The notes under the pieces were generated by a model that worked only from the letters and a program-made list of their open reading frames with translations, did no database searches and was not told the DNA's origin. A program made the translations under genes and the position numbers. Positions 1,621 to 64,000 of a stretch of 64,000 bases of DNA are shown here, in pieces. This DNA comes from Octopus bimaculoides (Eukaryota). How positions within the stretch are numbered: position 1 is the stretch's first letter; the number at the start of each line of letters is the position of its first letter. The stretch spans positions 64,539,869-64,603,868 of the forward strand of contig NC_068990.1 of the NCBI RefSeq assembly GCF_001194135.2, read 5' to 3'.

Positions 1621-4145
1621 ACATTGGAAGTCCTAAAAGAATTGCTTATATCTATATACTCACTACGTCCTGTCTCTGCTCTTGATCTGATCCCACCAAG
1701 CCTATCTCTAACCCTTTATCACCTCTCATCTTCCTAGAATGCATCCTTCCATTCCTCTAGCTATGGTAGTACTCAGCTACTGTAATCATGAGAGCAGAAT
1801 TTGTTCATATTTCAACCCCACCTTAATGCTAGGAGTTATCTCCCCTCTCCCATGCAATCACTTTCTTTCGAATTCTATGTCTTCTAAGTTAATTGGTGAA
1901 CTCACAAGTTTTAGAGACATGAGTAAAAAAAGAGCGCACTCTATAAAGTGGTTGATATTAGGAAGAGTATACAGCCGTAGAAACTACACCAAAGCAGACA
2001 CTGCAGCTGAAGACAGTCCTCTAGTTCATTGGGCCCTGCCAAACCGTTCAACCCATGCCAGCATGGAATGGTAAGTTTGACAAGATTATGATATTATGCT
2101 AATTCTCACTACTCTGAAGTATTAAGGAGACCAACTTGAGTCAGAACCATACTTAGAAATTATTCTAGGCATGAGAGCCTCTTCAGCCAACACATTATAT
2201 ATTCCCCAAATCATACATGGTTCCTATTCTTACTTTATCATTGAACATTCAAAGATAAATAACAGGTAAAATATATTATTCAGGTTTAATAGAAAAAAAA
2301 AACCCTACTGAGGCTATTTCAAACTTACCATTCAGCCAGGAATAGATTCTTAATTTAGATCACCATCATCATTTAACACTCGTTTTCCATGCTACCATGG
2401 GTTGGACGATTTGACCAGAGCTGGTAATGCAAGGGGGCCGCACCAAGCTCCATTGTCTGTTCTGGCATAGTTTCTATAGCTAGATGCCCTTCCTAATGCC
2501 AACCACTTCACACAGTGTACAGGGTGCTTTTTATGTGGCACCAGGACAATGAATATCTTAATGAAATTTTGATGAGATTTTTAAATCTACCAACATTTTC
2601 TATGATAACACAAACAACAATAATGAAAGGGTCAAGATGACTCCCTAATCTCTTTTCTCATGTGGAAAAACAAGTAGCATGCAAGATACAAGCCCCACAG
2701 ATGAAGGTCTTCTAAACAATCCAATCCTAAAATTTTATTCCAACACCCAGAGAAAGAATTAACAAACTGAGAATTTAACTCTTTAGCATTCAGACTATTC
2801 TGTCAAATGTATTGTTTATTTATTCACATTGTTTTCAATTAATTGTTTATTTTGGGATTGACTTTGTAGGGTTGTTGTGAAAGGCCTGAACTGGCTGGTC
2901 TGAACATAAAACAGATAGAATATTTTGGCCGGATATAATCAGTTTAAATACATATACTAAGAGTAAGAATTTCAAAAGATATCAAGAAATCATTTTCACA
3001 CATGGATTTTTGTTATTCTCAACTATATTACTTTCTTTAAGTATCACTATTTACTCCAATATAGGAATATGTGCTGATGTAAGAAATTATTAATATGGAA
3101 ATATGTGGCAAATGATGAAATCTTTTAAAACTGTTAGTAAAATGAAATTCAAATCCAAATTCGATTCCTAGTCTGAATTTATGTTGGTAATGTTCTTAGA
3201 ACTTACCTCTTGTCTTCAAAAACAAAAAACTTAGATGAGAAACTGAGTTGAAATTTTAAGTATGATTTTACTTTTCATTCATGTGATGGCAATACCAGTA
3301 ATATAGACTGAGAGGAATATAAAAAGATATTGCCTGAATTGCCATTCCTTTTGTTAAAGTGATTTGTAAATAATGATATCTTGTTTCAGAGTTTTTGCAC
3401 CATCTTAAAAATAAACCTTTAGTATTACTCTTTCCCTTGTTAATTTGAACAAGAAATAATTCTACATGAGTATGGAGATGTGATAATGTGAAGGATGATA
3501 ATTAGATAAAGGAGTGCCATCTGGAAGGAGCCTGTAGCAGAGGAAAGTATGGGAAGGGGTCAAGATTGATCTCAGAAGGCAGCAATGAAGGACAGCAACT
3601 TGCATGTATGGGGAAGACAAAAATTAAAAGATAATATTTTACATCAAACAATGATGGCCAAGATGAATTGACTGATAGCTTCTTAATTCATGAATTGGGG
3701 CTAGTATCGCAGAGTTGGCACTGTAGCTCCCCTTGATAAACTACTGACTCACTCCTCCCGTAATTACAGTGAAAAAGTAGAAGAGAAAGAAGATAATTCA
3801 ATAAAACTGAGATATACTTTGGTGCTTAAGTCTCAATAGATGAATGCTGAGCTTAGCCTTTCTGCTATATTTACTAAATTGTACAGTACATTAAAAACAC
3901 AAGTAGCCATATTTTTAAAGACAGTAGAGCTGACAGTGAAATAGTGTAAATCCCTCAGACTAGTTGCCTTTCACTATTTGCTCTGTACTCTCAACCATTT
4001 TATCTTTATCTGTTCAATAATTGTTGAAGAATGGTATAAACAATTTCTTTATCCTCAATTAGTCTTAAGAAATGTGTTGGTGATATTTGGAAATATGAGG
4101 CTGTCATTTTAAAGAATATATTTAAGGAAAAGAAGGTTTACTTAC

Positions 4146-4830
4146 TTGGAATACGGATTTTTACTTTGCCACTTTGACCAAAACTGCCCTCAATAATTCC
4201 ATTCTCACCACTTGATAATGTTACTTTGAGGTTGGCAAAGGCTTGTATATTTGTTTCTTTCTTGAATAAATCCTTGCCAATTAGTGAATGAGCATCAGTA
4301 ACTCGTTCGACCCTACCTTCCCTGGACTTGATTTTAAATATCTTCAGTTCTGATAGTTTATTCTCTTTGTACTTTGAGTCAGTGTAATAAGTTAATAGCT
4401 GTCCATGGAATGCAATCCGGCACACATTGGCATTGATATCACTGTCGAGTTTGGAGCCAATCACTAGACAGGATGCCAAACAAGTAATGGGTTTTTCAAA
4501 TTCCAAGAGAGCATATTGGCAGAGATTGGTCTGGTGGGGTTGCTTTTCTAATAATTCTTCTTGGTAATTATATTCTTTTGAAAGATCTAAAGTAGTATCT
4601 TGTTCAGAAGCACTTTCAGTGCCAAAAAATGTGACATGGGCCATGATAGTTTCATGACCCATGGTTATATGGAACTTGGCATTAGTGGATACGGTTCCTT
4701 TGTAGTAAGGGGTCTTCTTTACAAAGATTATTCCAGCATAAATAGTAGGTAAGGAACCTGGAGAACACACAAGGCCACGCTCAAGGTGTTTAGGATCAAA
4801 CTGTGTCACACAAATACCAGCCCGGTCACC
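4146..4830 (-). CDS. EEFSEC: Selenocysteine-specific elongation factor, coding exon 6 (GDRAGICVTQFDPK...GQSGKVKIRIP)
   Basis: Acceptor ttttgtag|GGT at 4830 and donor CCA A|gtaagt at 4146; 685 nt, in frame with exon 5. The translation matches eEFSec motifs TQFDPK..ERG, KFHITxGHET, EFEKP, CRIAFHG, LFKKETNI and FGQSGK. Confidence 0.95.
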
Positions 4831-5254: not shown

Positions 5255-5508
5255 TGTGCAGGTAGCATGTAAAAAGCACCATTTGAGCGTGGCCGTTGCC
5301 AGTACCACCTGACTGGCTCTCATGCCAGTGGCACGTAAAAGCACCCACTACACTCTCAGAGTGGTTGGCATTAGGAAGGGCATCCAGCTGTAGAAACTCT
5401 ACCAGATCAGATTGGAGCCTGGTGCAGCCATCTGGTTCACCAGTCCTCAGTCAAATCATCGAACCCATGCCGGCATGGAAAGCAGACGTTAAACGATGAT
5501 GATGATGA
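5255..5508 (+). mobile_element. SINE or short retroposon with RTE-type 3' tail ending in (GAT)n
   Basis: Ends ...ccatgccggcatggaaagcagacgttaaacgatgatgatg. A near-identical family recurs at 20986-21312, 10510-10660 (minus), 13840-13985 and many other sites. Confidence 0.8.
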
Positions 5509-8500
5509 TCAACTACTTCTATGAAGCTTTCTGAGCGTATGAAAGAATTTATTTCACATATAAAGTCTTCTTGTTCTGTCAGCTTGCACCTCTTATGGAT
5601 CCATAGTTTGCACTGGGTATGCCAGATGGTCGCTTCTACAATGGCTCTAGTTCTCTCTCTTCCTTCTTGTGGACTAAAGCTGTAGTCTTGGCTAGATTTA
5701 TTTTGAGGATACCTTGATTCCAAGCATGGAATTTTTTCTGTTAAATGACGTCCTAACAAAATGCCAGTCTTAAAATTATATTATGGCTGGAGAATATAAC
5801 AATAAACAGAAGGGGTCTGATAACTGAGTCTTGGAAGCTAAATTCCTCACAGAATTCATGGCTAAGTCACCAATCCTAATGACTACAGAACATGGAACCC
5901 AAAAGCTTTTTCCAATCAAAGTGAGTGGATTACTCCAAGCTCAGTACTTTTACAGTTGCTGCATCAAGAAAAGATATTGGCAGACTTTGCCTCAGAACAA
6001 ATCCAAACTATATTGTATTTAATCTAATGCTCTTCCTAATCATCATTGTTATTTAACATCTGTCTTCCATACACCAGACTACCATGTCTGTTTTAGTATG
6101 GTTTTTACACTGGATGCCCTTCCTAACCCCAACCATCCTGTAGAGTGGACTGAATGATTTTTACATGGCACCAGCACAGACAAGGTCAATTTTGGTATAG
6201 TTTTTATAGTTGGATGTCCTTCTAAATGCCAACCACTTCACAGTGTGGACTGGATGCTTTTTACATGGCACCAGCACTGGTAAGGTCACCAAGTAACTTG
6301 CAAGACAAAGAATTTTGAGAGGGAGGTGGGCATTGCAGGAGATGATCTTGTGTCAGATGATGAAAGGTTAGAGTGTGACAGAGAGACACAGAGGCAGAAA
6401 CAGGTGTCTTGCTATAGAGGAGGTACATGGTTGGTTAGTTAGTGAGTGAGAGGAGAGGAGAGAGGAAGAGAGAATGGGAGAGAGGAAAGAGAGAAATAGA
6501 GAGATAACAAGAAAGAGGACAGAAACAGGTGTGTTGCTGTAAAGGAGAGACTTGGTTACCTAGCCAGAGAGAAGAGCAAGCTATAACTCTTTCCAGTATC
6601 TCCCATATCCTGGTCCAATTTGATAAATCTATAGTTGACTATCCAGCATATCTCTTTTGCCCTTGTATCAGTTTGCAATGATACAACATCTCTTTGTATT
6701 TCCTAACTGATAAGGCATGTGCTTAGTGTATGACCAACCACACCAGATAGTTTCGACAACTAATTGGTTATCTCTGATGATCAAGCTGCCTTCCCCACCT
6801 TTATATCATTAATCATGCTTTGAACCACATAGAGAGCTGTCAACTTCAAAAATTACTCTCTGCTGGGCCATTTTTGGACCCACTTTCTCCCATGCATCTA
6901 TGCTATAATGAAGAAAGTTGTTTATTAGTTAATTGGGAATATGTAATTTTTACTTAAAGTAATTAAGTTGACACTGTCTACAAATTTAAATTTTGATATT
7001 TTTTTTATCAAAATGTGATTTTCATGATTCATTTATTATTGAAAATTTCAATGTGAGATAGCATTTTTAAACACTGTGAGATAGAGTCCCCTCTTTGTCT
7101 CTTCTCTCACATTCTCTCTCAAACACTTCATCATGCTACTTTCTACACACATATCAGTAATGACATTTTACTAGATTATAAGTCTAATCCAGCATCAACC
7201 AAATTATATTGATTCCAGGCTCATTTTACATTTGTTGGGTGTTTTTGAAGAAATAGGAAACTGAAGAAGAAAAATGGTTTGAATTTAAGTCAATTGTACC
7301 AAATTTGTCTCATTTTTCTTTGAACTAAAGTATTGGCTCCAACTTTGTTTCTTCATAAATGAAAAATGAATAGTTTTTAATGAAATATCTTTCAGATGAT
7401 GTAGATTATGATTATATCAGAATTTGTTGTGAAAACATTTTTGGAAGTGGAGGAGAGGAATTTTGGCGAAGTCATATGCCTCAACTTTGTTTCCATTTTA
7501 AAAGTGAAAGTTGCAATTAAGTCATAAAAAAAAATTGCTTTTGAGAACTATTCCTTCTGGAATTTGTTAAATGAATATTTTTTAAAAAAATGAATTTTTC
7601 CAGATATACAAAGGGAAATGAGAAGTTAGAAAAATTACACAAATTAGAAATCAAATATTACTTAGTGACCAGCAGAAAATTGCCCTTCTAGAAGTTGTTA
7701 AATGAATATTTTTTAATAAAATGCAATTTTTCAGAGATACTAGCATAATTTGAAGAAAAAAATACATATCAGAGGTGAAATTGTTAATGTGACAGTTTGG
7801 TTATGCTATAGGCCTTAGAATATACCCACTACATGGTGCCTGCTATTTTTAGCATACTAAATGACCATGTAGAGGACGGGCTACTTTTGAGTTTGATTAA
7901 AAGAGAGAGATTAACACCATGAGAAAATAAATGGAAGAAATATCTCATGAGTGAGTGAGTACTATTAGATGAATAAAGGATACAAAGGAAAATTAGAGAC
8001 ACGTCAAAAAACTACACAAATTGGGAACAAATGTGTCAATATCATTTAGTGACAAGTAGAAAACTGTTTGGAGATTGATCTTTTTGCTTGTTCTCTTCAA
8101 TGAACATCTCCTTTCCATTGTGGAACCCATGAGGGTAAATGCATTAATATCATTCAATACATGCTTCTCTCTAACAAAATCTTGATTCTCTTCAAAAACA
8201 TTAAAAAAAAAAAAACTGACAACTAGAGTAAATTTTCTTTGTGGCAATATTGCTGCAAACTGATCAGAACCAATTAATGAGGAAGTGTAAAAAGAAAACT
8301 ATTTACAATAGTACAATTTTTAACACAGAAATTTGATTTAAAGAACAAGAGTAGTAGTGGAAAACTGTTCATTCACTTATCACACACACAACATACATAC
8401 TTGGTATTGTGCTGCAAAACAAAATACTGAAAAGATAAACCAGAACTATTATCTTTTCTAATGAGTTCACTAAGAAATAATAACATTGTTTCGCCTTTGG

Positions 8501-8529
8501 TAAAAGTATAGGGAATATGTTGCAGCATT

Positions 8530-8637
8530 ACCTCAGAGCACTCACAAGACACTGTATGTCCCAGCTGTTGGCTCATTGAAGCCAGACATAGTTGATGAGC
8601 ATACTTCATATTTGCGCAGAGTTTAGTCATCATTGGT
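8530..8637 (-). ncRNA. Intronic box C/D guide RNA, copy 1 (candidate scaRNA, possible U4 5'-end guide)
   Basis: On the minus strand: ACC-A-ATGATGA (box C, 8633-8627), guide CTAAACTCTGCGCAAAT, ATGA (box D', 8609-8606), internal hairpin, CTGA (box D, 8536-8533), then GGT closing the terminal stem. An outer TGTTGCA/TGCAACA stem is also present. It is sense to EEFSEC within intron 5 and has a paralog at 10242-10363. Confidence 0.8.
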
Positions 8638-8764
8638 TGCAACAAGAGGGAAAAAACTAAGAGAGACAAAGAGGTAAGAAAACTCCTAAAGGAAAGAAAA
8701 TGACTGAAAGAGTAAATTAGAAAAACAAATTGCACAATTCAGTTGAATAAGTAGAAAAGACAGT

Positions 8765-9330
8765 GGATCTTTTTTAAAACGGGGGCCACATTTTTCATTA
8801 ATGTTTTACGTAGTGTTTTTGGTACCGAAAGACTTTCAAACTTTGTATACTTATCTATTTTGTGTTATAGAACAGAAAAATATTTTTGTATTCGAATTTA
8901 TTTCATGTAAAAAATTGTCTTATTTCGATAATTTCAACCAATCACTGACAAGTATTCAGTTGTTTACATTTACTCCCTTTGGCTGATTAAGCGATGTAAA
9001 GCGTATTTAATTTCCATAGCTTCGTTTTGCTTTTTTCTTTTTAAATTTGCTGTTTTACCCTAGCCTTAACCCTAACCCTATCACCGATAGAATTGTTTCA
9101 GAATCGTTTGTTTATGTAGTCGGCACTTAATGTATATCGGCTGAATGGGCGTCAGTGATTGGTTGAAATTACAGAAATACGACAACTTTAACATGGAATA
9201 AGTTAGGGATTTCTTTTTTTTTAAAGAAGACTAAGAGAAAAAGATGTTTTATATGACACATTCTACCAGTGTTCCAAGTTTCAAAGTGTTTCGTTAATGA
9301 AAAATGTGGCCCCCGTTTTAAAAAAGATCC
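8765..9330. mobile_element. Non-autonomous DNA transposon (MITE), GG termini, 8-bp TSD, Merlin-like
   Basis: About 36-bp TIR ggatcttttttaaaacgggggccacatttttcattaa and its reverse complement. Exact TSD aagacagt at 8757-8764 and 9331-9338. Internal ttaaccctaacccta near 9065-9080. Confidence 0.85.
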
Positions 9331-10241
9331 AAGACAGTTGATTATAGAAGATGATTTGGGGTGGATTCAATGCTGCTGGTGTTGCTAGATTTGAATGTGC
9401 ATAATTCTTTTTAAAACAGGTGAGTAAAAAGATCTTCAACAGACATTGGATGTGAAAGATTTCCACTGTTTCAATGTATGAAGTCCATGACTAACACCTA
9501 AACAGAAGAGTGGAAATACAGATTGGCCAGTAGATAGAAGTTGAGCATTCACTAGAAATGATATTGCTTAAGTATGGGAATTAGAAAGGAAGATATAGCT
9601 TCTTGTTACTGTTGTACTGAGAAAGTGAATAAGCAGGTGTGGGTGGGTGGGGAATAGTGTACCATTCACAAATGATCTGCTTGTGGCAGTTAACTATCAG
9701 GCCCATTTTTTTCCATAAAATGTAATGGCTGCTATGGTGGCTTATAGTTCTTATGAAGTGTGAACACTGAAAACACTATCATCAGACTAATGTAGTTCAA
9801 TGAACTATTCAGTTGTGAACTTATTGGTACATTGCATTTCTCTGACATTGAAAAGGTTCACTTCTAGTGACCTCCATTTCATTCATATGTATAGCAGCAT
9901 GGTCACACAAATGAGGAAAGTATTAAACAGTGCAGTTGTCAACATGAGCCCAAAAGGCCCAGATGGCTACTCTCCGAAAACAACTTGGGCCATCGATTTT
10001 TAATGAACTAACAAAGTTTCCTGAATTTGAGTGAATAACCATTGTTGAACATTCAGCACGTTCTCTGTATACAATGTTAAATACCTTTGACAGTTTCCCA
10101 AACAGTCCTGATGCCATTCCTTATATTTCTTCTGAAGTTGCTAACTAAAAATCATAACAATTGTGGCAAAATCCATTGTGGCTTCAGTGTAACATTTAAC
10201 ATTTTTTAAAAATACTTTTTAATATTGATAGGATTAGAATT

Positions 10242-10363
10242 ACCTCAGAACACTCTTAAAACAGTGTATGTCCTAGCTGTTGGCTCAACAAAGGATTAAC
10301 AATGGAGCTAGACATACTTGAAGGACATACTTCATATTTGCGCAGAGTTTAGTCATCATTGGT
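10242..10363 (-). ncRNA. Intronic box C/D guide RNA, copy 2 (candidate scaRNA)
   Basis: Box C ATGATGA (10359-10353), box D' ATGA (10335-10332), box D CTGA (10248-10245) and ACC/GGT terminal stem. The 40-nt block 10326-10365 is identical to 8600-8639. Internal GTATGTC-TAGCT...AGCTA-G-GACATAC hairpin. Confidence 0.8.
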
Positions 10364-10952
10364 TGGACAAGAGGGTGGGGGATAACTAAGAAAGAAATAA
10401 TGGTAAGAAAACTTAACAAGGAAATGACAAAAAAGTTGAATATATATATTTAGAGAAACAGTTTAGCTGGTTCATTGGATTACCCAGGGTTTTACATCCA
10501 TAAAGCGCTTAGCTTTTCATACATCTCATCATCATCATCGTTTAACGTCCGCTTTCCATGCTAGCATGGGTTGGACGATTTGACTGAGGACCGGTGAACC
10601 AGATGGCTCCAACCTGATTTGGCAGAGTTTCTACAGCTGGATGCCCTTCCTAATGCCAGTATATATATATATTACTGACGAGATTATATATATATATATA
10701 CACACACACACATAACAGTGAATTCAGTTAACAAAGATAAAAAGGAAGAAAAATGAAGCAAAGAAAATGGAAAAAGGAATTACTATGACATAAAGCCTTA
10801 CAGTGAGAAACATGGGAGAGACATAGCACTAACATGTTAAAGAACATATTAGGCATAGAAAAAGACGGTGGGATTGTTGAGTGTGAATGCCTTTCATTAT
10901 AGGTTTACTCAATGATGATTAAATAACATTGATACATTTATTCTTCACTGAC

Positions 10953-11036
10953 CTGAACAACTTTCTCAACAGGTAAATGAAACATTTGCATAGATTTAAC
11001 ATTCTTGGTCACTTTCAGAGATGGGATTTCAATGGT
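10953..11036 (-). CDS. EEFSEC: EEFSEC coding exon 5 (TIEIPSLKVTKNVKSMQMFHLPVEKVVQ)
   Basis: Not in the ORF track; found by reading the minus strand. Acceptor tattttcag|ACC, donor CAG|gtcagt, 84 nt, phase 0/0. It fills the expected eEFSec gap (EIP.LK...VKSMQMF). Confidence 0.95.
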
Positions 11037-12396
11037 CTGAAAATATACAAATAGGAAGATTGCAAACAAATAATTAGATATTCAATTCCTCAAGATGAAA
11101 GTAGATGCATTTAGATCATCATATCAGCTGTTGCATATATTTATATTCTAAGCTTTTCTATTTTATTTTTACTCTCTATCAAAGGTGATCTAAATAAACA
11201 GAATACTTTTACAATGTCTGTTGTCTTGGACCAATGCATGTTGATATATACATGATTCTTCTGGTATAGGCACCCTATTTTCAGAAAAGGAGGAAGATAG
11301 AAAGTGAAATAAACTACAGTATACAAAATTAAACTGATACATGTAGTAATAAAATAAACCTGATGGTGTGTATGTTTGTTTGTGTGCAGTCTCTGCATAT
11401 TATTCTAGAGATACAGCCAACTGCAGCCTTTTGTCTTCATATGAGAAATACACAATAAAGGCACTACACAAATCACAAATGTAGCCAGTATCAGGGCATA
11501 TTTGCATTTAACAGCCAAGCATGATATGGATATGAATTTCTTTATTGTGGAGAACATGGAGACTAGTCTTTCATTTCTAAATGGAATATCTTACACATAT
11601 CATTAAGTCTCACCGTTATCAACATAGAATTCTGTTACAAATCTAATGCAAATTACTCAACCAAATTTGCCCAAGGGAACAGAGCTCATGACCATGTACT
11701 TCATAGAAGATTCAAAGATCAAGTTAGTTCAAACTGAAATAACTCTGTCATTTCAAATTGTATTGCAACATTGGAAGTCCCACAATTATAACCATCACCA
11801 TTTAATGTCTGTTTTGCATGCAGACAAGGGTTGAAAGATTTGAGAAGAGCTGGTGAGTCAGAAGATTGTAACAAACTCCTTTATCTACTTTGGTATGGTT
11901 TCTATGGTTGGATGTCCTTCCTAATGCCAACCACTTTACAATGTACTGGGTGCTTTTTATATGGCACCAGCACCAGTGAGGTCACCAAGTAACTCACAAG
12001 ACAAGACTCCTCAACTGAGGATTGTGCAGAATTGAGGGCAAAAAACAAAAAAACAAAAAGTTACCTTCATGAGTCATACTGACTCATAAGGGCCGGTTTT
12101 CTGGCTTCATGGCATATATATATTCCCCACCTGGACAGGACACTGGTGCATCATAGGATTACTCATTTTTGCCACCAGAGTGGAGACTGGAGCAGCATGA
12201 AATGAAATGCTTTGCTGAAGAACACAATGCGTTGCTCGGTCTAGGAATCTAAACCACCATCTTACGGTCAGGAGTTCAACACCCTAACCACTAAGCCATG
12301 CACCTCCACATAGAGAAGTGAGGGTAGTGGTTTTATGCCAGGAGATGAACAATTAAAGTCTGAGAGAGAGACAGTAACAGGTGTCTTGCTCTAGGG

Positions 12397-12634
12397 CAGT
12401 GGTTCTCAACCCTTTTTTGCCTGTGGACCCCTTTGATTCCTGTTTTACTCTACTGGACACCCATACAAGTTTGATGCTTAAAAGAAAATCTCATAATTTT
12501 ATAATTAAATGTTATTAGGAATTGTACAAAAAAACTGTTAAAATATTTTGTGTATTGTAGAAGCATAACCAATTTCTTGTACACAAATTTTAAGAAGAAA
12601 ATCTTCTATGAACCACTATGGTTGAGAACTACTG
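12397..12634. mobile_element. hAT (Charlie-type) MITE
   Basis: TIR cagtggttctcaacc / ggttgagaactactg. 8-bp TSD ctctaggg (12389-12396) versus ctctaagg (12635-12642), one mismatch. Confidence 0.8.
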
Positions 12635-13790: not shown

Positions 13791-13831
<41 letters not shown>

Positions 13832-14094
13832 CATACCAGCATGGGTTGGACGATTTAACTGAGGACTGGTAGACCAGGTGGCTATATCAAATTGAAGCCT
13901 GGAGTAGCCATCTGGTTTCACCAGTCCACAGTCAAATCGTCCAACCCATGCTAGCATGGAAAACGGACGTTAAACGATGATGACACAAGTATACTGTCCA
14001 GTCGGTTCTTACTTTACCAAGAAACAAGTATGTATTTTCAGAAGTTGCTTGCTATTTCTAGCAAGATGAGTAACAACACAAGCTTTTTTACTGA

Positions 14095-14979: not shown

Positions 14980-16014
14980 TTGGGTCATCCCATAAATAAT
15001 GCAGTTTTTTTTATACTTCTTTTATTTTTCAAAATTAAGATAACAAAGTTCTTTTTTTAATCTAAAATATACTCTCCTTCATTTTTTACAATGCTCTTCC
15101 ATCTATCTGGTAGACTTGCAAGGCCCCTCTTCCAAAATTCACCAGTCCATGATGAAAAATACTCCTCCATTACTCTTCTGATCTCGTCTACAGAATTCAT
15201 ATTTTTCCCGTCCAAATGATTTCGAAGACTGTAGAATAAATCATAATCAGATGGGGCAATGTCCAGCGAATATGGTGGGCAAGACATTGTTTCCCATTCA
15301 AATTGTTCTAGCCTTTGGAATGTCATCCTCGCCTGATGGAAGAACACCTTTCATCTTGAAACCAAAGACAGTCATTTTTCTTCCAGCTCTGACTGAAGCT
15401 GCCCAAGCTGCTCACAGCAGATCTCCTTTGTTATCGTTTGGTTTGGGTTTAAAAGTTCAAAGTGGACTAAACCTTTCATATCCCACCAAATAGATAACAA
15501 CACCTTACATGGGTGAAGACCTTCTTTAGCTTGGAGTGCCAGTGTTTCTCCTTTCCCAACCCACTGCATTTGGTCCAAAAACAGGTTAATTCATATGACA
15601 TGACAGCAAAGAAGAGCACACATTCACTCTCTGCACGCGATTAGACTCGGAAAGTTTGAGAGGAACCCACTGACCCAATTTGCTGGCTTTTCCGATGGCA
15701 CGCAGGTATCGATGAATGGTTGAATGACCAAATCCAAGCTTCTCTGCTAGTTCTTCAATAGATACAATAAGATTTTGTTCCACTAGGGTTTGCAGGATGT
15801 CCTCATTGAGCTCTACAGATCTTCCAGGATGAGACTCATCCTCTAGGCTGTAGTTTCTGGCTCAGAATTTCTGAAACCACTGTTGACACTGGCTTATGCT
15901 TATTGTCTGATCCCCATATACTACACTAATATTCTTCGCACTTTCCATTGCATTGTTGCCTTTCTTGAACTCATAAAGCAAATTATGCTAATTATGCTCC
16001 TTTGTCATTTCCAT
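14980..16014 (-). mobile_element. Mariner (Tc1/mariner) transposon remnant with transposase pseudogene
   Basis: TA followed by TIR-like ttgggtcatcccataaataatgc at 14980. Frameshifted fragments include GQWVPLKL (WVPHEL-like), SIWWDMKG, and CPPYSLDIAPSDYDLF (YSPDLAPSD-like). Start-like MEMTKEH at 16014. The second TIR was not found. Confidence 0.9.
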
Positions 16015-49310: not shown

Positions 49311-52300
49311 AAGTTCCTGTACTTGATAAGATGCATCAGCTTAAGTAAAATTGCAGTATTTCACACATACAGACTTGTCCTTTCTGGTGTTGGTGCCACA
49401 TTAAAAGCACCCATGCCAGTGATGTGTAAAATTACCTATGCTGGTGGCACATGAAAAGCACCCAGCACACTCTGTTAAGTGGTTCACATTAGAAAGGGCA
49501 TCCAGCTGTAGAAATTATGCCACAACAGACAGTTGGAGTCTGGACATCTCCCAGGTGGCCAACTCCATGTCAAACCATCCAACTCATGCCAACATGGAAA
49601 GCAGACGTAAAATGATGATGATGAGATATATACACACAAACACACACTCTCTCTCCTTCTCTCATACCCACACACGACTGGCTAGTTTCCATCTACTAAA
49701 TCCACTCAACAAGGCTTTGGTCGGCCTGAGGCTATAGTAGCAGACACTTGCCCAAGGTGCCATGCAGTGGGACTGAACCTACAATCATGTGGTTGGGAAG
49801 CAAGCAAACTTCTTACCACACAGCCACACCTGGTAGGAGAGGAAGAATCGGAAGAGAGAGTGATTGATGATAGATGTTGGTAGAAGTTTAAAATAGAAAA
49901 CAGGAGCAGCATGAGGGGATAGCAATAATGACATTTCTTCTTCAAAGGGATGATGGATAACAAATTGGTGATGGTAAATGTGAATAGTTGATATCAACTA
50001 GAAATGAGGGAAGAGGGGATGATGGTTAAGTGGCAGAGGCAAACATTAGGGGTACTGAATACAGATACTTTTAATGCCATCCTTGGATATACAGGTGTTG
50101 TGATGGAAGAGAGGCAGAGTTATAGAGGGATGATGGTGGGAGACTAGTTGAATGGTAGTGTGTTGGTGGAAGTTTTGGATAGAAATTGATCAAATGTCCA
50201 CCTTTGTTAGATAAATAGCACAGTGAATAGGCAGGTTTAATGAAATATTATACATTACAATCCCCACCATCACAGTTACTTTAAATAGCACCAGTAGGTA
50301 GATCTCTAGTACCATGCGTTAGCCTTCATTGTGGTCCGTTGTCATTTTCATCAGGTTCGAATTCGGTTTACACCACTTTGTCCCTTGACTCATTTCTCCA
50401 CAGAATCTTTACACTTCATAATCTCAGTATTTGTTTATATACTTGGCATCCATATGCATCGCATGTATGTCAGTGCAGTTTTCTTCCTTGCACACTACAC
50501 TCAATTCCTCTTATATCCAGCTTCACTCTCAGCTCATTTATGCTTTAGTATTACATTCACCAACATTACACATCCAACAGTTATGTTATCTGAAAAAAGG
50601 GACATTAAAATGGTAGTGGGCATGGTGTTGGCAGTGATTTTTATACATGTAATTTCCTCTAAGGGTTTGTATTTGCACTGGGTTTGTGTAAAAGATAAAA
50701 CAACACCTTCAAATTTTCACTTTTAATTTATAAAAATACTTTTAAAAGGTCAAGTACTATTTCTATGAAAAGTGTATGAAAAGTTTTTTGACATTGGGTG
50801 AGAGAAAGCAGGAATAAAGAAAGCAACAACAGAAGGAAGGGAATGAGAAATGAAAATAAGGAAGAATAAAAATAAATCCCTGTTAATTTGAGAAGTGGTT
50901 CTGATGATATTCCTCATCACCCTCTAATCTTTTGGAACAGCTAGCTACTGACATACGTTTTTCTAATTTCCCCCACTACTCTTTTAAAGCAATTGAATTT
51001 CTGGGATTTTTATGGAGCAAGATATCCAGGTGGATAGATTAACAAAGTAAGTACAGTGACTGCGATTTATATTTCTGTAATAAGGTCAACAAGCTTCCCT
51101 GAATATATTGGTAAAGACAGAAAATAATATTGCGGAAGAGAAAATAGGGTGAACTGTAGATTGGCGTATTTGTGTTTCTAGATAGATTCCTCATTGTTAT
51201 ATGAATGAAGTTGAGGTGTGGTTTGAGAAAGGAAGCAGAATTTTAGGGTTATTTCCAGATGTACTTGTGTATCTTTGTTTCTTCTTTTTTTTTCCTATGT
51301 AAATAAAGTGTGTGTGTGTGTGTAATGAGAGCAATGTATCTGTTGTTGCTGATATGAACATTGCTATTTGTGTTGTTGTTTAGCTGTTAATTTGTTGCAA
51401 GGAAGTTCTTGAAAAGAAGGAATTTCATAGACTATAGGGGAGTACAGCCAAACCTAACCATAACTGCCACCAAACTATCACTGCAACTCCTTTCTCCCTT
51501 TCTTTACACTTGTATGTTATCCCCTTTTTATAGCATTGAATGGAATATATGGGCAATGACATGGAACTTGACAGGTCGATAGGAGATGGGTTAATACAGA
51601 TATCACATGTATATGTAGGAAGATATAGAAAGACATTTAGATAGATAGTTGGAGCTGGTTGATTCAAGCTGTCAAAACCCTTGAGAGTGACAATGAAATA
51701 ACAATAGCAGAAAAGAATGTGTGACTAAGTTTTCAGGAATGATATCATTGAATCTTAGAATTATCAAATTGGATTTGAGCAGATTACATGTTCAAACTGG
51801 AGTCTTAGTTGAATACTGAATGCTCTTACAGTCAGCAATAACAATAAGAGGAACAATGGCATTTTTTCTGGAATTCACAGCTTATCTGTTTCCATTAAAT
51901 TCAAATATAATCAAGAATTTGGAAGGATTTAGTAAAATAACTTTCTCCATTAAGTCAGTGTTTGGAAAATTTTAATGAAAGGATCTCGCATAAAACAAGC
52001 GAATGCAAAAGCTCTTCTTTGGTTGCTAGGTCTGCTAGAAATAGCTACCACATCTCTTGCAAACCATGTGCTACTGATTTTAAGACAGTGGACAATGTTG
52101 TCTGAGGTACACTGTCTGTATGTTTAAAATAATCATCATTTAATGTTTGTTTTTCATGCTGGCATGGGTTGGACAGCTTGACAAGCTAGCAAGATCAGGG
52201 CCACACATGGCTCATTGTCTGTTTTGGCAGTGTTTCTACAACTGGATAGTCTTCCTAATGCCAGAGTGTGCTGACTACTTTTTACATAACCTCAGGTACA

Positions 52301-52366
52301 GTGCTTTTTACATGGCACCAGGTTTTTGATCATAAGTTTTCTCAATCAGGATTGACCTGATGCTAG

Positions 52367-56500: not shown

Positions 56501-57355
56501 ACAATCATAGACTTGACAGTTTGTGAGATGGATAACAAATAAATTGTTACTCTGTATCTTACAAAATTCTGTCAATTTTAAATGATACACTTTTTAATTA
56601 AATTGTTCGTTATTAACTTGACTGTGTGTTTACCTTTTTGAAGTTACATTCCTTCATCTTGGCAGTTATCTATTTTCAACAATACCATACACTACCATTT
56701 GGTGGTATACTCTGCTGAATTTACTCATAAAGTGCATTGGTGTGGGTACTGGTGCTATGTAAAAAGCAACCAGTCCACTCTGTGGTGTGGTTGGCGTTAG
56801 GAAGGGTACCCAGTCATAGAAACCGAGCCAAAACAGACTATCGAACCTGGTGCAGCTTCTGGCCTTGCCAGTTCCTGTCAAGCTGTTCAACCCACACTAG
56901 TATGGAAAACAGGCATTAGATATTGATGATGGTCATGGTGACAGTGATTGGTGTGTCTTTTGTCTGATTTTTATCTTTCTGGTGTAGAAAATAAAACATT
57001 TCTAGTATCAGTTCTATTAACCATTTTCCTATTTACCATATTTTTCAAATGACATGCTTATCAATGTTATGGTTTAGTTATTAATTATTATTCAAACACT
57101 CATCAGGTTTTGATTCCTTTACATTGATTCCTTTACATTGATTCCTTTACATTGTGTAAACAATTGGAATATTAGTTTGTTTATTTGTGTATTCATTTCT
57201 GCTGCAGCTATTTGGATATATCTTAGCTCTCTCAGTAGATACTGGGTGCCAAGATAAAGTAATATTAGATCAATTAACAGAAGTTACAGTCCATTACCAT
57301 TTAATCCCACCCCTCTCCATGCCAAAATTGCACTTAAATGTTTCTAGCATTGAAA

Positions 57356-59575: not shown

Positions 59576-61019
59576 CAGGACTGTTAATAAATTTTAAATG
59601 AAATAATGATAATGTTTGCTACTATCTACTAACCATTCACTTTTATTCTTTACTGTTTGGGGGTGTGTATATAAACCTCACCTCTCTATTTTCTTCACTG
59701 AAAAACTATTAAAAGAAAAAATTACTTTATACATTAGTACACAATGTCACTGTTTTAATTGACTTTCATCAGTGCCACTACTAGTACTGGGCAGTTAAAC
59801 AGAAAACACTATTAATCTTTTTTCCTTTCTCAGTTAACTAAACATTAGTTTACTTTGTAGGGTATTTTTTTCTATTCTTGAGATAAAATAAAGGAAATAT
59901 ATCACATGTATGTCTACACATTGTGTGTAAATGACCTACATGCTGTGTATATGTGCGTATTTAATGATTGGTGAATTGAAATATGTGTGGGTTTCAAGTT
60001 TGGGTAATCATCACATTCTGTAATTATGTAATTTTTGTTGGTCAAAACAATGCTGGTATGGGAAAACATTGAGAGTATTATTAGTAGGGACACATTACTG
60101 GTTGTTGCTTAATGTTTATGCTACAATAAAGTAAGTAATCATTTACTGAACAGAAGGTAGTATTTTATCTATAATAATAACTGCAGCATTGACTCTTAAC
60201 TGGAACCACTGCATTTATAAAACAAATGCATTTGAGAAAGGCATGAACGTGTCTATTTTATAAATTTCCTTTCCTAAATATCTAGGGAAAACCATGCCAA
60301 AGCTGACCTCATCCATGCTGGTTGTCATTAAAAAAGCACTCGGTCCACTCTGCAGGATGGTTGATGTTAGGAAGGGCATCTAGCTGTAAAAACCATGCCA
60401 AAGCAGACACAATAGTCTGGCGTAGTCTTCTACCAGGCCAGCTTCTGTCAAACCATCCAGCCCATGCCAGGATGGAAGGCAGACGTTAAACAGTGATGAA
60501 GATGACTTCTCTTGCTTACTTGTTGCCTAGGGCCACCCACTGAATCCATTGATGACCAAGCCTTCTTTGATTTGTGGATCTTTTGATGACTATATTTTGG
60601 TTATAGAACCTTGTTTGCCATCATCTCCATGTTGAAGTGTTCTTTATTTTCTTGTGGTAGTGCTGAGTGTGTTTCTCCTCTATATCTTCATTTTCCAAGT
60701 TATACCATTAAATTAACTGGTAGGTACCAATGCCTTCCAATTTTGTAGAACTGATGTTCTTCAAAGCAATCATTAGCTGGTCTTTAAAACCCTTTGGTTT
60801 ATCATTGACCATAATAAAGCTGACCATCAAAGATCCTACTGGGGTGTGCGGGGAGACTTCAGTCAGACATGTACACTAAATGTCCACACGATCTTAGTTG
60901 ATGATCCATTTGAATTCCAGAGAATAATTAATTAGTGCAATCACTAATACACTGATGCTCACTACTCTCTTTAGATCTGAGCTTGATGGTTACACACTCA
61001 TGCATGCACACACACATAC

Positions 61020-62028: not shown

Positions 62029-62065
<37 letters not shown>

Positions 62066-62274
62066 NNNNNNNNNNNNNNNNNNNNNNNNNNNNNNNNNNN
62101 NNNNNNNNNNNNNNNNNNNNNNNNNNNNNNNNNNNNNNNNNNNNNNNNNNNNNNNNNNNNNNNNNNNNNNNNNNNNNNNNNNNNNNNNNNNNNNNNNNNN
62201 NNNNNNNNNNNNNNNNNNNNNNNNNNNNNNNNNNNNNNNNNNNNNNNTATATATATATATATATATAATATATA

Positions 62275-62305
<31 letters not shown>

Positions 62306-63627: not shown

Positions 63628-64000
63628 TCAGGTCATCCCATAAGTTCTGTCCGAATTATGAATAAAGAAAACAAGTGATCAAATGTTATATTTAATTGAA
63701 ATTTAATCATCAATGTACTTTGCCTGATTATCTATGACTTTCTTCGATCTATTTACAAGCTTTTCAATTCCATCAATGTAAAACTTTTTTGGTTTCGAAG
63801 CGAAGAACTCTGAAATGTTAGTTTCGACCTCTTCCTGGTTTGCGAAAGTTATGTCCCCAAATGATTCTGTAAACTACGAAGCAAATGGTAGTCTGAAGCA
63901 GCAAGGTCGGGAGAATAAGGTGGATGAGGAATTTTTTTCCAACCAAGTTCTTCAATCTTCTGTGATGTGATCTTTGCAGTGAGGGGTCGCGCATTGTCCT
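63628..64000 (-). mobile_element. Mariner transposon 3' part with frameshifted transposase, running off the window
   Basis: TA followed by TIR-like tcaggtcatcccataag at 63628. Minus-strand fragments DNARPLTAK, PHPPYSPDLAASDYHLLRSLQNHL and FYIDGIEKLVNR...KYIDD* (stop at about 63703). Confidence 0.9.

What the first reader, a model, noticed from the sequence alone, without database searches (positions are those of the whole stretch)
8530..10365. Duplicated intronic box C/D guide RNAs in EEFSEC intron 5, with a guide matching the U4 snRNA 5' end (candidate scaRNA pair)
Seen in sequence: two ~110-120-nt units about 1.7 kb apart on the host-gene strand. Each has ACC-A-AUGAUGA ... AUGA ... CUGA-GGU, the canonical C/D terminal geometry. 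A 40-nt block (box C, guide, box D') is identical between copies, while the flanks remain alignable but clearly diverged. This pattern suggests purifying selection after an old local duplication. Established knowledge: the guide CUCUGCGCAAA is complementary to the vertebrate U4 5' end (AGCUUUGCGCAGUG) over UUUGCGCAG, and vertebrate U91/SCARNA17 guides 2'-O-methylation of U4 C8, as I recall, with a box C-proximal antisense element. Inference: this is an invertebrate U4-directed scaRNA hosted by a translation-factor gene. Caveat: the D'+5 rule here points to U4 G7 rather than C8, and an rRNA target is not excluded.
Basis: partly seen in the sequence, partly recalled or inferred. Interest (0 to 1): 0.78.

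Follow-up and report, generated by a model that had tools for sequence, protein, structure and literature searches.

The report
Duplicated intronic U4-directed box C/D RNA
An intron of the selenocysteine elongation-factor gene carries two copies of a small guide RNA that most likely directs methylation of the start of the U4 splicing RNA; it is an unannotated invertebrate relative of a known vertebrate guide, so it is real but largely ordinary.

Summary
Two box C/D units lie on the minus strand at 8530-8637 and 10242-10363, in coding intron 5 of EEFSEC. Each has a terminal stem (ACC/GGU), box C, a 17-nt guide, a D' box (AUGA), an internal hairpin and box D. A 40-nt block is identical between the copies; the rest of the RNA is 81% identical.

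The guide block is conserved. A sister lineage whose EEFSEC exon 6 is only 66% identical has the same guide with a canonical CUGA D' box, in the next intron of the same gene. About 27 eukaryote-like metagenome contigs in at least nine sequence groups carry box C/D units with C[A/U]CUGCGCAAAU directly before a NUGA D' box, in other host genes.

The guide pairs with U4 nt 4-12, or nt 4-14 if this animal's U4 has A13. The only Rfam family that matches it is the vertebrate U4-C8 guide, at 17 bits against a threshold of 40.

Verdict: a genuine, unannotated invertebrate counterpart of the vertebrate mgU4-8 guide. The one oddity is an extra A before D'. By the standard spacing rule this points to G7, not C8. 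Expression, methylation, Cajal-body localisation and this animal's own U4 sequence could not be tested.

The parts
8530..8637 (-). Box C/D unit A (108 nt, terminal stem ACC...GGU)
   Evidence: Coordinates of all boxes. Full-length Rfam match to RF00283 at 17.6 bits, E 1.4.
8627..8633 (-). Unit A box C, AUGAUGA
   Evidence: Invariant in the three-way alignment.
8610..8626 (-). Unit A guide CUAAACUCUGCGCAAAU. The U4-complementary core CUCUGCGCAAA is 8611-8621. The fifth nucleotide upstream of D' is C at 8614.
   Evidence: RNAduplex against human U4 gives -15.2 kcal/mol with 9 Watson-Crick pairs to nt 4-12. With A13 it gives -19.6 kcal/mol and 11 pairs to nt 4-14. AAACUCUGCGCAAAU is invariant in winA, winB and L001.
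8606..8609 (-). Unit A box D', AUGA (degenerate form of CUGA)
   Evidence: The same position is CUGA in L001, and CUGA or UUGA in the metagenome family members.
8537..8605 (-). Unit A internal segment. It holds a hairpin starting 1 nt after D', the conserved UGAGCC (8570-8575) and a C'-like GUGAGU (8540-8545) lying 4 nt before box D.
   Evidence: Fold of the internal segment gives -17.6 kcal/mol. UGAGCC is invariant in all three cephalopod-clade units. The layout matches the Rfam SCARNA18 consensus ...CUgAGAACgGA-CUGA.
8533..8536 (-). Unit A box D, CUGA
   Evidence: UCUGAGG is invariant.
8519..8524 (-). Unit A possible external stem, 3' arm UGCAAC. It pairs with GUUGCA at 8638-8643.
   Evidence: Read directly from the flanks printed. 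Unit B has no counterpart. Inference only.
10242..10363 (-). Box C/D unit B (122 nt). It carries a 14-nt insertion in the apical part of the internal hairpin.
   Evidence: Rfam RF00283 at 17.0 bits, E 2.2.
10353..10359 (-). Unit B box C, AUGAUGA
10336..10352 (-). Unit B guide, identical to the guide of unit A
10332..10335 (-). Unit B box D', AUGA
10249..10331 (-). Unit B internal segment. It has a 9-bp basal stem (GUAUGUCCU/AGGACAUAC), UGAGCC (10282-10287), GUUAAU (10295-10300) and a degenerate C'-like AAGAGU (10252-10257).
   Evidence: Fold gives -19.7 kcal/mol. Motif coordinates.
10245..10248 (-). Unit B box D, CUGA
8524..8695 (-). Duplicated segment, copy A (the unit plus about 56 nt of upstream flank)
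   Evidence: A single blastn alignment, 76% identity over 190 columns, E 4e-37.
10236..10424 (-). Duplicated segment, copy B
10953..11039 (-). EEFSEC coding exon 5, the upstream boundary of the host intron
   Evidence: tblastn with P0006 and P0031.
4144..4830 (-). EEFSEC coding exon 6 (domain III and the start of domain IV), the downstream boundary of the host intron
   Evidence: Pfam PF21208 at 8e-40 and PF21131 at 2e-31. tblastn.

Best explanation
Each unit is an intron-encoded box C/D guide RNA with a single guide.

Proposed mechanism (inferred):
- The unit is released from EEFSEC intron 5 after splicing and trimmed back to its terminal stem.
- It assembles with the box C/D core proteins, including the methyltransferase fibrillarin.
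- The 11-nt element CUCUGCGCAAA, between box C and box D', pairs with the 5' end of U4 snRNA (nt 4-14). This is the strand that later forms U4/U6 stem II.
- The paired U4 nucleotide is then 2'-O-methylated: G7 by the strict fifth-nucleotide rule, or C8 if the ruler tolerates one extra nucleotide.

The RNA is the invertebrate counterpart of the vertebrate mgU4-8 guide, which is the 3' domain of scaRNA17 and is modelled in Rfam as RF00283. The two copies come from a local duplication of about 180 nt. Selection has kept box C, the guide and D' unchanged in both.

Shown here: the anatomy, the duplication, the host gene and intron, conservation of the guide block across lineages, and complementarity to U4.
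Inferred: processing, RNP assembly, the target, and the methylated nucleotide.
For: 1. Both copies have complete box C/D anatomy on the host strand.

2. The guide block has no substitution in 40 nt, against 13 in the other 70 RNA positions. A mismatch-free run that long arises in 2.4% of random placements.

3. L001 belongs to the sister lineage by an EEFSEC exon-6 tree and is 66% identical in that exon.
- It has one unit inside EEFSEC with AAACUCUGCGCAAAU and a canonical CUGA D'.
- UGAGCC and UCUGAGG are also conserved. The rest of the RNA is diverged.
- The terminal stem covaries: ACC/GGU against GGCC/GGCU.

4. A metagenome scan recovered at least nine sequence groups of eukaryote-like box C/D units with the same guide and D' spacing.
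- Several have terminal stems of 5-10 bp.
- One group lies next to an SPT6 exon (E 3e-12).
- None lies in EEFSEC.

5. Two guide positions were not fixed by the search pattern. They still fit U4 and then stop: position 12 is C in 11 of 13 representatives (opposite G14), and position 11 is A in 9 or U in 4 (opposite U4 nt 13). Positions 13 onward are not complementary to U4.

6. RNAduplex places the window guide on U4 nt 4-12 at -15.2 kcal/mol, or nt 4-14 at -19.6 kcal/mol with A13. Only 105 of 20000 shuffled guides reach 9 contiguous pairs anywhere in U4.

7. RF00283 SCARNA18 is the only box C/D family Rfam matches to winA, winB, L085 and L057, and the best-scoring one for the L001 unit, at 16-22.6 bits. 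The alignment covers the guide and the tail before box D.

8. Human U4 Cm8 is guided by scaRNA17/mgU4-8 (PMC7960923).
Against: - All Rfam scores are far below the gathering score of 40, with E-values of 1-6. The match rests largely on the guide, so it is not independent of the complementarity argument.
- Against human U4 only 9 contiguous pairs form. The 11-bp duplex needs A at U4 nt 13 in this organism, and that could not be checked.
- The spacing selects G7, not the C8 methylated in vertebrates. No report of Gm7 in U4 was found.
- No rRNA, tRNA or other snRNA of this organism could be searched, so another target is not excluded.
- The terminal stem is only 3 bp, and the units lie 3.7 and 5.4 kb upstream of the 3' splice site.
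- The C' boxes are degenerate (GUGAG in A, AAGAG in B).
- There is no expression evidence.
- Guide positions 1-10 in the metagenome family were fixed by the search pattern, so their invariance is not evidence.
Confidence: 0.66

Rival explanations
1. The units are genuine box C/D guide RNAs, but the real target is not U4. It could be an rRNA, a tRNA or another snRNA carrying AUUUGCGCAGAG, or the RNA could be an orphan with a non-guide role.
For: The 15-nt stretch AAACUCUGCGCAAAU is conserved between the window and L001, which is longer than the 11 nt that U4 explains. Nine contiguous pairs to a 145-nt RNA arise in 0.5% of shuffled guides, and the pool of possible targets is large. No rRNA of this organism could be examined.
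Against: Across the wider family the conservation ends exactly at the nucleotide opposite U4 G14, and the extra AAA is not conserved. The one variable guide position lies opposite U4 nt 13, which is unpaired in human U4/U6 stem II (sequences). A universally conserved rRNA site would not be expected to vary there. The only Rfam family matched is the vertebrate U4-C8 guide.
Confidence: 0.15
2. Only one of the two copies is functional, and the other is a decaying duplicate. The 40-nt identity would then reflect a recent or gene-converted duplication rather than selection on both copies.
For: The run test is only moderately significant (2.4%). Unit B has a more degenerate C' (AAGAG), a 14-nt insertion and no external stem. 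Unit A has a weaker basal hairpin stem. L001 manages with one copy.
Against: Both copies keep every box, the terminal stem and the internal hairpin. Substitutions at 19% of the remaining RNA positions argue against a very recent duplication.
Confidence: 0.3
3. The units are fragments of a dispersed repeat or a snoRNA-derived retroelement, with no function at this locus.
For: The intron is full of mobile-element debris. A MITE-like element with perfect 38-nt terminal inverted repeats lies between the copies. The duplicated segment is short, about 180 nt. Genome-wide copy number could not be measured.
Against: The core occurs only twice in 64 kb, both times in EEFSEC. A sister lineage has it in the same gene, with diverged body sequence, conserved boxes and a covarying stem. 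There is no poly(A) tail next to either copy.
Confidence: 0.03

Closest known systems
Vertebrate mgU4-8 guide: the 3' domain of scaRNA17 (mgU12-22/U4-8, MBII-119), modelled in Rfam as RF00283 SCARNA18
   Same: It is a box C/D RNA whose guide lies between box C and D' and is complementary to the U4 5' end (the GCGCAG core). It has a single guide, and a C'-like (N)UGAG lies a few nucleotides before box D. It is the only Rfam family matched. U4 Cm8 is assigned to it in the literature.
   Different: - Scores are 16-22.6 bits against a gathering score of 40.
- The guide has one extra A before D', so the duplex covers U4 nt 4-14 rather than 5-15, and the fifth nucleotide lies opposite G7 rather than C8.
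- The nucleotide opposite U4 nt 13 is U here and A in vertebrates.
- Human scaRNA17 is a capped, independently transcribed Pol II RNA with two domains (PMC5612246; PMC4041459). The RNA here is intronic, has one domain, and carries a long internal hairpin of 50-130 nt.
Drosophila mgU4-65 (scaRNA:MeU4-A65) and the other Drosophila box C/D scaRNAs
   Same: They are invertebrate box C/D guides that act on Pol II-transcribed spliceosomal snRNAs, including U4 (PMC3884663). [quoted passage not shown]
   Different: The target site differs: A65 there, the 5' end here. No guide for the U4 5' end is among the Drosophila scaRNAs listed (mgU2-25, -28, -41, -48, mgU4-65, mgU5-38, -42). Drosophila C/D scaRNAs carry the CAB element cgaGUUAnUg. 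Only unit B has a partial match (GUUAAU), and it lies in a copy-specific insertion.
[quoted passage not shown]
   Same: They are intronic and have a long apical hairpin between D' and C' (PMC4041459; fold).
   Different: The predicted hairpins of the window units contain no run of consecutive G.U/U.G pairs and no UG repeat.

Membership tests
Box C/D guide RNA (snoRNA/scaRNA class) | Box C (RUGAUGA) near the 5' end and box D (CUGA) near the 3' end, brought together by a terminal stem | tested here: met
   AUGAUGA and CUGA are flanked by ACC/GGU in both copies. The stem covaries in L001, as GGCC/GGCU. The stem is short at 3 bp. Unit A may add a 6-bp external stem.
Box C/D guide RNA (snoRNA/scaRNA class) | Internal D' and C' boxes | tested here: inconclusive
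   D' is AUGA here, and CUGA or UUGA at the same position in relatives. The C' candidates are degenerate: GUGAGU in A and AAGAGU in B. Relatives have RUGAU after the hairpin.
Box C/D guide RNA (snoRNA/scaRNA class) | An antisense element of at least about 10 nt ending next to D or D', complementary to a stable RNA | tested here: inconclusive
   There are 9 contiguous pairs with human U4 nt 4-12, or 11 with an A13 variant. The organism's own U4 could not be obtained.
Box C/D guide RNA (snoRNA/scaRNA class) | Located in an intron on the sense strand of the host gene | tested here: met
   The units lie on the minus strand between EEFSEC exons E5 and E6.
Box C/D guide RNA (snoRNA/scaRNA class) | Accumulates as a discrete small RNA bound to fibrillarin, Nop56, Nop58 and 15.5K/Snu13 | not testable with these tools
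   No expression or protein-binding data were available.
Rfam RF00283 SCARNA18 (vertebrate U4-C8 guide) | Covariance-model score at or above the curated gathering score of 40 bits | tested here: not met
   Scores are 17.6 and 17.0 bits for the window units, 16 for L001, and 22.6 and 20.7 for L085 and L057. At gathering thresholds the window has no hit.
Rfam RF00283 SCARNA18 (vertebrate U4-C8 guide) | The guide places U4 C8 opposite the fifth nucleotide upstream of D' | tested here: not met
   The window guide places G7 there. The Rfam consensus places C8 there.
scaRNA (Cajal-body-specific guide RNA) | The substrate is a Pol II-transcribed spliceosomal snRNA | tested here: inconclusive
   U4 is the best-supported target, but it is not demonstrated.
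scaRNA (Cajal-body-specific guide RNA) | A Cajal-body localisation element: CAB box ugAG, the Drosophila C/D element cgaGUUAnUg, or a G.U/U.G wobble stem (PMC4041459) | tested here: inconclusive
   UGAGCC is conserved inside the hairpin of winA, winB and L001, where it occurs twice. GUUAAU is present only in unit B. There is no wobble stem. The motifs are 4-6 nt long, so chance is not excluded.
scaRNA (Cajal-body-specific guide RNA) | Concentration in Cajal bodies and binding to WDR79 | not testable with these tools
   This needs FISH or co-immunoprecipitation.

The most novel reading that the evidence does not exclude
The invertebrate U4 5'-end guides form one ancient family. In it the guide-U4 duplex sits one nucleotide further from the D' box than in vertebrates. 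The 2'-O-methyl group in U4/U6 stem II would then lie on G7 in cephalopods, insect-like and coral-like hosts, and on C8 in vertebrates. That would be a modification site that slid by one nucleotide while guide and target stayed conserved. A more radical variant is that the RNP acts mainly as a U6-mimicking placeholder on the U4 5' end rather than as a methylation guide.
Probability: 0.3. Interest if true: 0.6.

Novelty: new member of a known kind. Interest (0 to 1): 0.4.

Why it matters
- It would extend the U4 5'-end methylation guide, so far described only in vertebrates in the literature I could read, to cephalopod-clade animals and apparently to many other invertebrates. That implies U4/U6 stem II methylation is ancient.
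- It gives a clean natural experiment on the box C/D spacing rule: G7 against C8.
- It gives a second natural experiment on guide-target co-variation. Guides with CUC predict A at U4 nt 13, and guides with CAC predict U.
- It shows a guide RNA changing intron within one host gene, and changing host gene between phyla.

None of this overturns current understanding. The main value is annotation and two sharp, cheap predictions.

Tried and rejected
- **Rfam at gathering thresholds on the whole window:** no hit.
- **Thermodynamic stability:** the z-scores of the whole units are unremarkable (+0.65, -0.36, -0.29). This is expected for box C/D RNAs and is not informative.
- **Other EEFSEC loci:** Mytilus galloprovincialis (L006) and three unnamed ENA assemblies (L007-L009) have no unit within the gene plus or minus 10 kb.
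- **Short Logan contigs of the closest relatives (L002-L005):** they do not reach the intron positions.
- **Protein search with the last EEFSEC exon of L001, to find more contigs covering intron 6:** it returned only the query. An intron-6 copy in the window's lineage therefore cannot be excluded, because the window lacks the last exon.
- **EEFSEC in the metagenome loci:** none.
- **U4 genes with position 13 left open:** no match in the prokaryote genome collection or in the viral contigs.
- **Literature strings for a U4 with A13:** only unrelated hits.
- **Literature on Gm7 in U4:** one irrelevant hit. 'MeU4' in a Drosophila paper refers to C137.
- **A guide upstream of box D:** rejected. The C'-like motif lies 4-5 nt from box D, and the region is not conserved between copies or lineages.
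- **A covariance model of the family:** considered and not built. The members were found with a pattern taken from the window, so scoring the window with that model would be circular.
- **Contig origins:** labels such as 'termite-like', 'coral-like' and 'ant-like' are my reading of contig names and are not verified. Only the SPT6 exon shows a eukaryotic host.
Full report
**What is in the sequence**

Read on the minus strand, the interval holds two box C/D units. Unit A spans 8530-8637 (108 nt) and unit B spans 10242-10363 (122 nt).

Each unit reads ACC-A-AUGAUGA-CUAAACUCUGCGCAAAU-AUGA-(69 or 83 nt)-CUGA-GGU. Their 5' ends are 1726 nt apart.

Only about 172 and 189 nt are duplicated (8524-8695 and 10236-10424). 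The two segments are 76% identical and include about 56 nt of upstream flank.

Inside them, a 40-nt block has no substitution (8600-8639 and 10326-10365). It covers the 5' stem arm, box C, the guide, D' and the first six nucleotides of the internal hairpin. The other 70 aligned RNA positions carry 13 substitutions and one 14-nt indel. A clean run of 40 nt or more arises in 2.4% of random placements, so the block is suggestive rather than decisive on its own.

The decamer CTGCGCAAAT occurs exactly twice in the window, only in these units.

**Host gene**

The open frame at 4141-4830 (minus strand) hits Pfam euk_SelB_III at 8e-40 and eEFSec_4th at 2e-31.

tblastn with EEFSEC proteins and with exon translations from other loci places the coding exons on the minus strand as follows:
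- E1: 27236-26940
- E2: 18178-17996
- E3: 16369-16268
- E4: 13725-13501
- E5: 11039-10953
- E6: 4830-4144

The last exon is not in the window.

**Conservation in the same gene of a sister lineage**

A 56-kb ENA contig (L001) encodes an EEFSEC exon 6 that is 66% identical to the window's.

In a neighbour-joining tree, the window and a 96%-identical relative group with L001 and its relative. Mytilus, Bugula, two other invertebrate loci and a fish fall outside this clade.

L001 carries one unit, GGCC-A-AUGAUGA-UAAAACUCUGCGCAAAU-CUGA-...-CUGA-GGCU. It lies in intron 6, between exons at 9827-10567 and 12356-12514. So the host gene is the same but the intron is different.

In the three-way alignment, only these elements are invariant:
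- CCAAUGAUGA
- AAACUCUGCGCAAAU
- the UGA of D'
- UGAGCC
- UCUGAGG

The terminal stem changes from ACC/GGU to GGCC/GGCU, which keeps the pairing. This pattern argues for a functional RNA and against a repeat fragment.

EEFSEC loci of Mytilus and of three unnamed assemblies have no such unit.

**A wider family**

A metagenome scan used TGATGA-N(4-10)-CTGCGCAAAT-N-TGA and returned 81 loci. Many are chance matches in prokaryote-like sequence.

About 27 fall into at least nine groups of eukaryote-like box C/D units. These have a box D, terminal stems of 5-10 bp or external stems, and total lengths of 103-203 nt.

One group lies next to an exon with a significant SPT6 acidic-domain match (E 3e-12). 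None lies in EEFSEC. Host genes therefore differ between lineages.

All members share one layout:
- box C, guide and D';
- a long hairpin that starts one nucleotide after D';
- a single-stranded tail with a RUGAU-type C';
- a short spacer and box D.

In the window units the C'-like motif lies 4-5 nt from box D (GUGAGU in A, AAGAGU in B). That leaves no room for a second guide. The Rfam SCARNA18 consensus has the same layout.

**Target**

I took the human U4 and U6 sequences from PMC13253345 and computed duplexes.

| Guide | U4 tested | Energy | Watson-Crick pairs | U4 nt |
|---|---|---|---|---|
| Window | human (U13) | -15.2 kcal/mol | 9 | 4-12 |
| Window | A13 variant | -19.6 kcal/mol | 11 | 4-14 |
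| CAC-type family members | human (U13) | about -19.5 kcal/mol | 11 | 4-14 |

Only 105 of 20000 shuffled guides reach 9 contiguous pairs anywhere in U4.

Guide positions 1-10 in the family were fixed by my search pattern, so their invariance is not evidence. Positions 11 and 12 were free:
- Position 12 is C in 11 of 13 representatives. It lies opposite G14.
- Position 11 is A in 9 and U in 4. It lies opposite nt 13.
- Positions 13 onward are A-rich and not complementary to U4.

Conservation therefore stops where the U4 duplex would stop.

Rfam matches only RF00283 SCARNA18 to the window units, and to the units in L085 and L057; for the L001 unit it is the best-scoring box C/D family, with four others just below it (16-22.6 bits, gathering score 40). 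Its consensus guide CCACUGCGCAAU-CUGA pairs with U4 nt 5-15. The literature assigns human U4 Cm8 to scaRNA17, also called mgU12-22/U4-8 (PMC7960923).

**The off-by-one**

Relative to the vertebrate consensus, the window guide and every family member recovered have one extra A before D'. They read GCGCAAAU|NUGA where vertebrates read GCGCAAU|CUGA.

The fifth nucleotide upstream of D' therefore lies opposite G7, not C8. My scan fixed this spacing, so I cannot say how common the vertebrate spacing is outside vertebrates.

I found no report of Gm7 in U4. The Drosophila scaRNA literature I read lists no guide for the U4 5' end (PMC3884663).

**Is it a scaRNA?**

PMC4041459 lists the known Cajal-body localisation elements:
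- the CAB box ugAG;
- the Drosophila C/D element cgaGUUAnUg;
- the vertebrate G.U/U.G wobble stem.

The window units have a UGAGCC inside the hairpin that is conserved in the sister lineage. Unit B also has GUUAAU in its copy-specific insertion. Neither unit has a wobble stem. These motifs are too short to decide the question.

**What differs from the vertebrate guide**

- Human scaRNA17 is a capped, two-domain RNA transcribed independently by Pol II.
- The RNA here is intronic, has a single domain, carries a long internal hairpin, and uses a duplex shifted by one nucleotide.

**Caveats**

- No expression data were available.
- The organism's own U4 and rRNAs were not available.
- The terminal stems are only 3 bp.
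- The units lie 3.7 and 5.4 kb from the 3' splice site.
- The C' boxes are degenerate.
- Genome-wide copy number is unknown.
- No tool identified the organism.

**Verdict**

This is a genuine, unannotated box C/D guide RNA gene, present as a local duplicate. It is most likely the invertebrate counterpart of the vertebrate U4 5'-end methylation guide. It is a new member of a known kind. Two sharp predictions follow: U4 nt 13 is A in this organism, and the methyl group lies on G7 rather than C8.

Noticed in passing
window 8764-9331: A MITE-like element lies between the two units. It has perfect 38-nt terminal inverted repeats (8764-8801 and 9294-9331) and an inner 49-nt inverted repeat that is 84% complementary (8911-8959 and 9141-9189).
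   Followed up: no
window, e.g. 2395-2580, 5287-5496, 6082-6352, 10520-10600, 11722-11989, 13796-13969, 49423-49734, 52048-52326, 56669-56916, 60307-60526: A high-copy interspersed repeat occurs on both strands. It shows up as recurring pseudo-peptides (...WLALGRASS[CY]RN......NDDD...) in the six-frame translation, and as 'catcatcatcgtttaacgtccgctttccatgctagcatgggttggacg' next to unit B. It is probably a SINE.
   Followed up: no
window 15060-15861 (-) and 63706-64000 (-): Open frames resembling mariner/Tc1-type transposase remnants lie inside EEFSEC intron 3 and at the window edge (...PPYSLDIAPSDYDLF......PPYSPDLAASDYHLL...). This was judged by eye only.
   Followed up: no
window about 62030-62300: An assembly gap, part of the 1022 N in the window, is flanked by (TA)n-type and (CA)n-type simple repeats.
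   Followed up: no
L001 11593-11735 (+) compared with window 8530-8637 and 10242-10363 (-): The same guide RNA lies in EEFSEC intron 6 in the sister lineage and in intron 5 in the window. The window ends before the last exon, so a third copy in intron 6 cannot be excluded.
   Followed up: partly
L039 and L084 (also L017, L019, L028, L042, L066, L076, L078, L079): Ten metagenome contigs carry a related unit, AUGAUGA-CAAACUGCGCAAAU-UUGA. Its hairpin contains UUGAGUUCACUG, which resembles the Drosophila C/D CAB element. In L039 and L084 the unit lies about 1 kb upstream of an SPT6 acidic-domain exon.
   Followed up: partly
L034 and L044 (contigs JAAUXV010186472.1 and JAAUXV010276196.1): Two different units from one metagenome share the window's CUC-type guide (AAAUCUCUGCGCAAAU-CUGA). 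They have terminal stems of 9-10 bp and lengths of 185-192 nt. They may be paralogues in one host.
   Followed up: no
window 8519-8524 and 8638-8643: Unit A, but not unit B, is flanked by a possible 6-bp external stem (GUUGCA...UGCAAC). This could help processing so far from the 3' splice site.
   Followed up: no
L057 1728-1893: A long, near-perfect hairpin gives sub-threshold matches to plant and animal miRNA models on both strands (45 bits for MIR6445). It is probably an inverted-repeat transposon rather than a miRNA.
   Followed up: no
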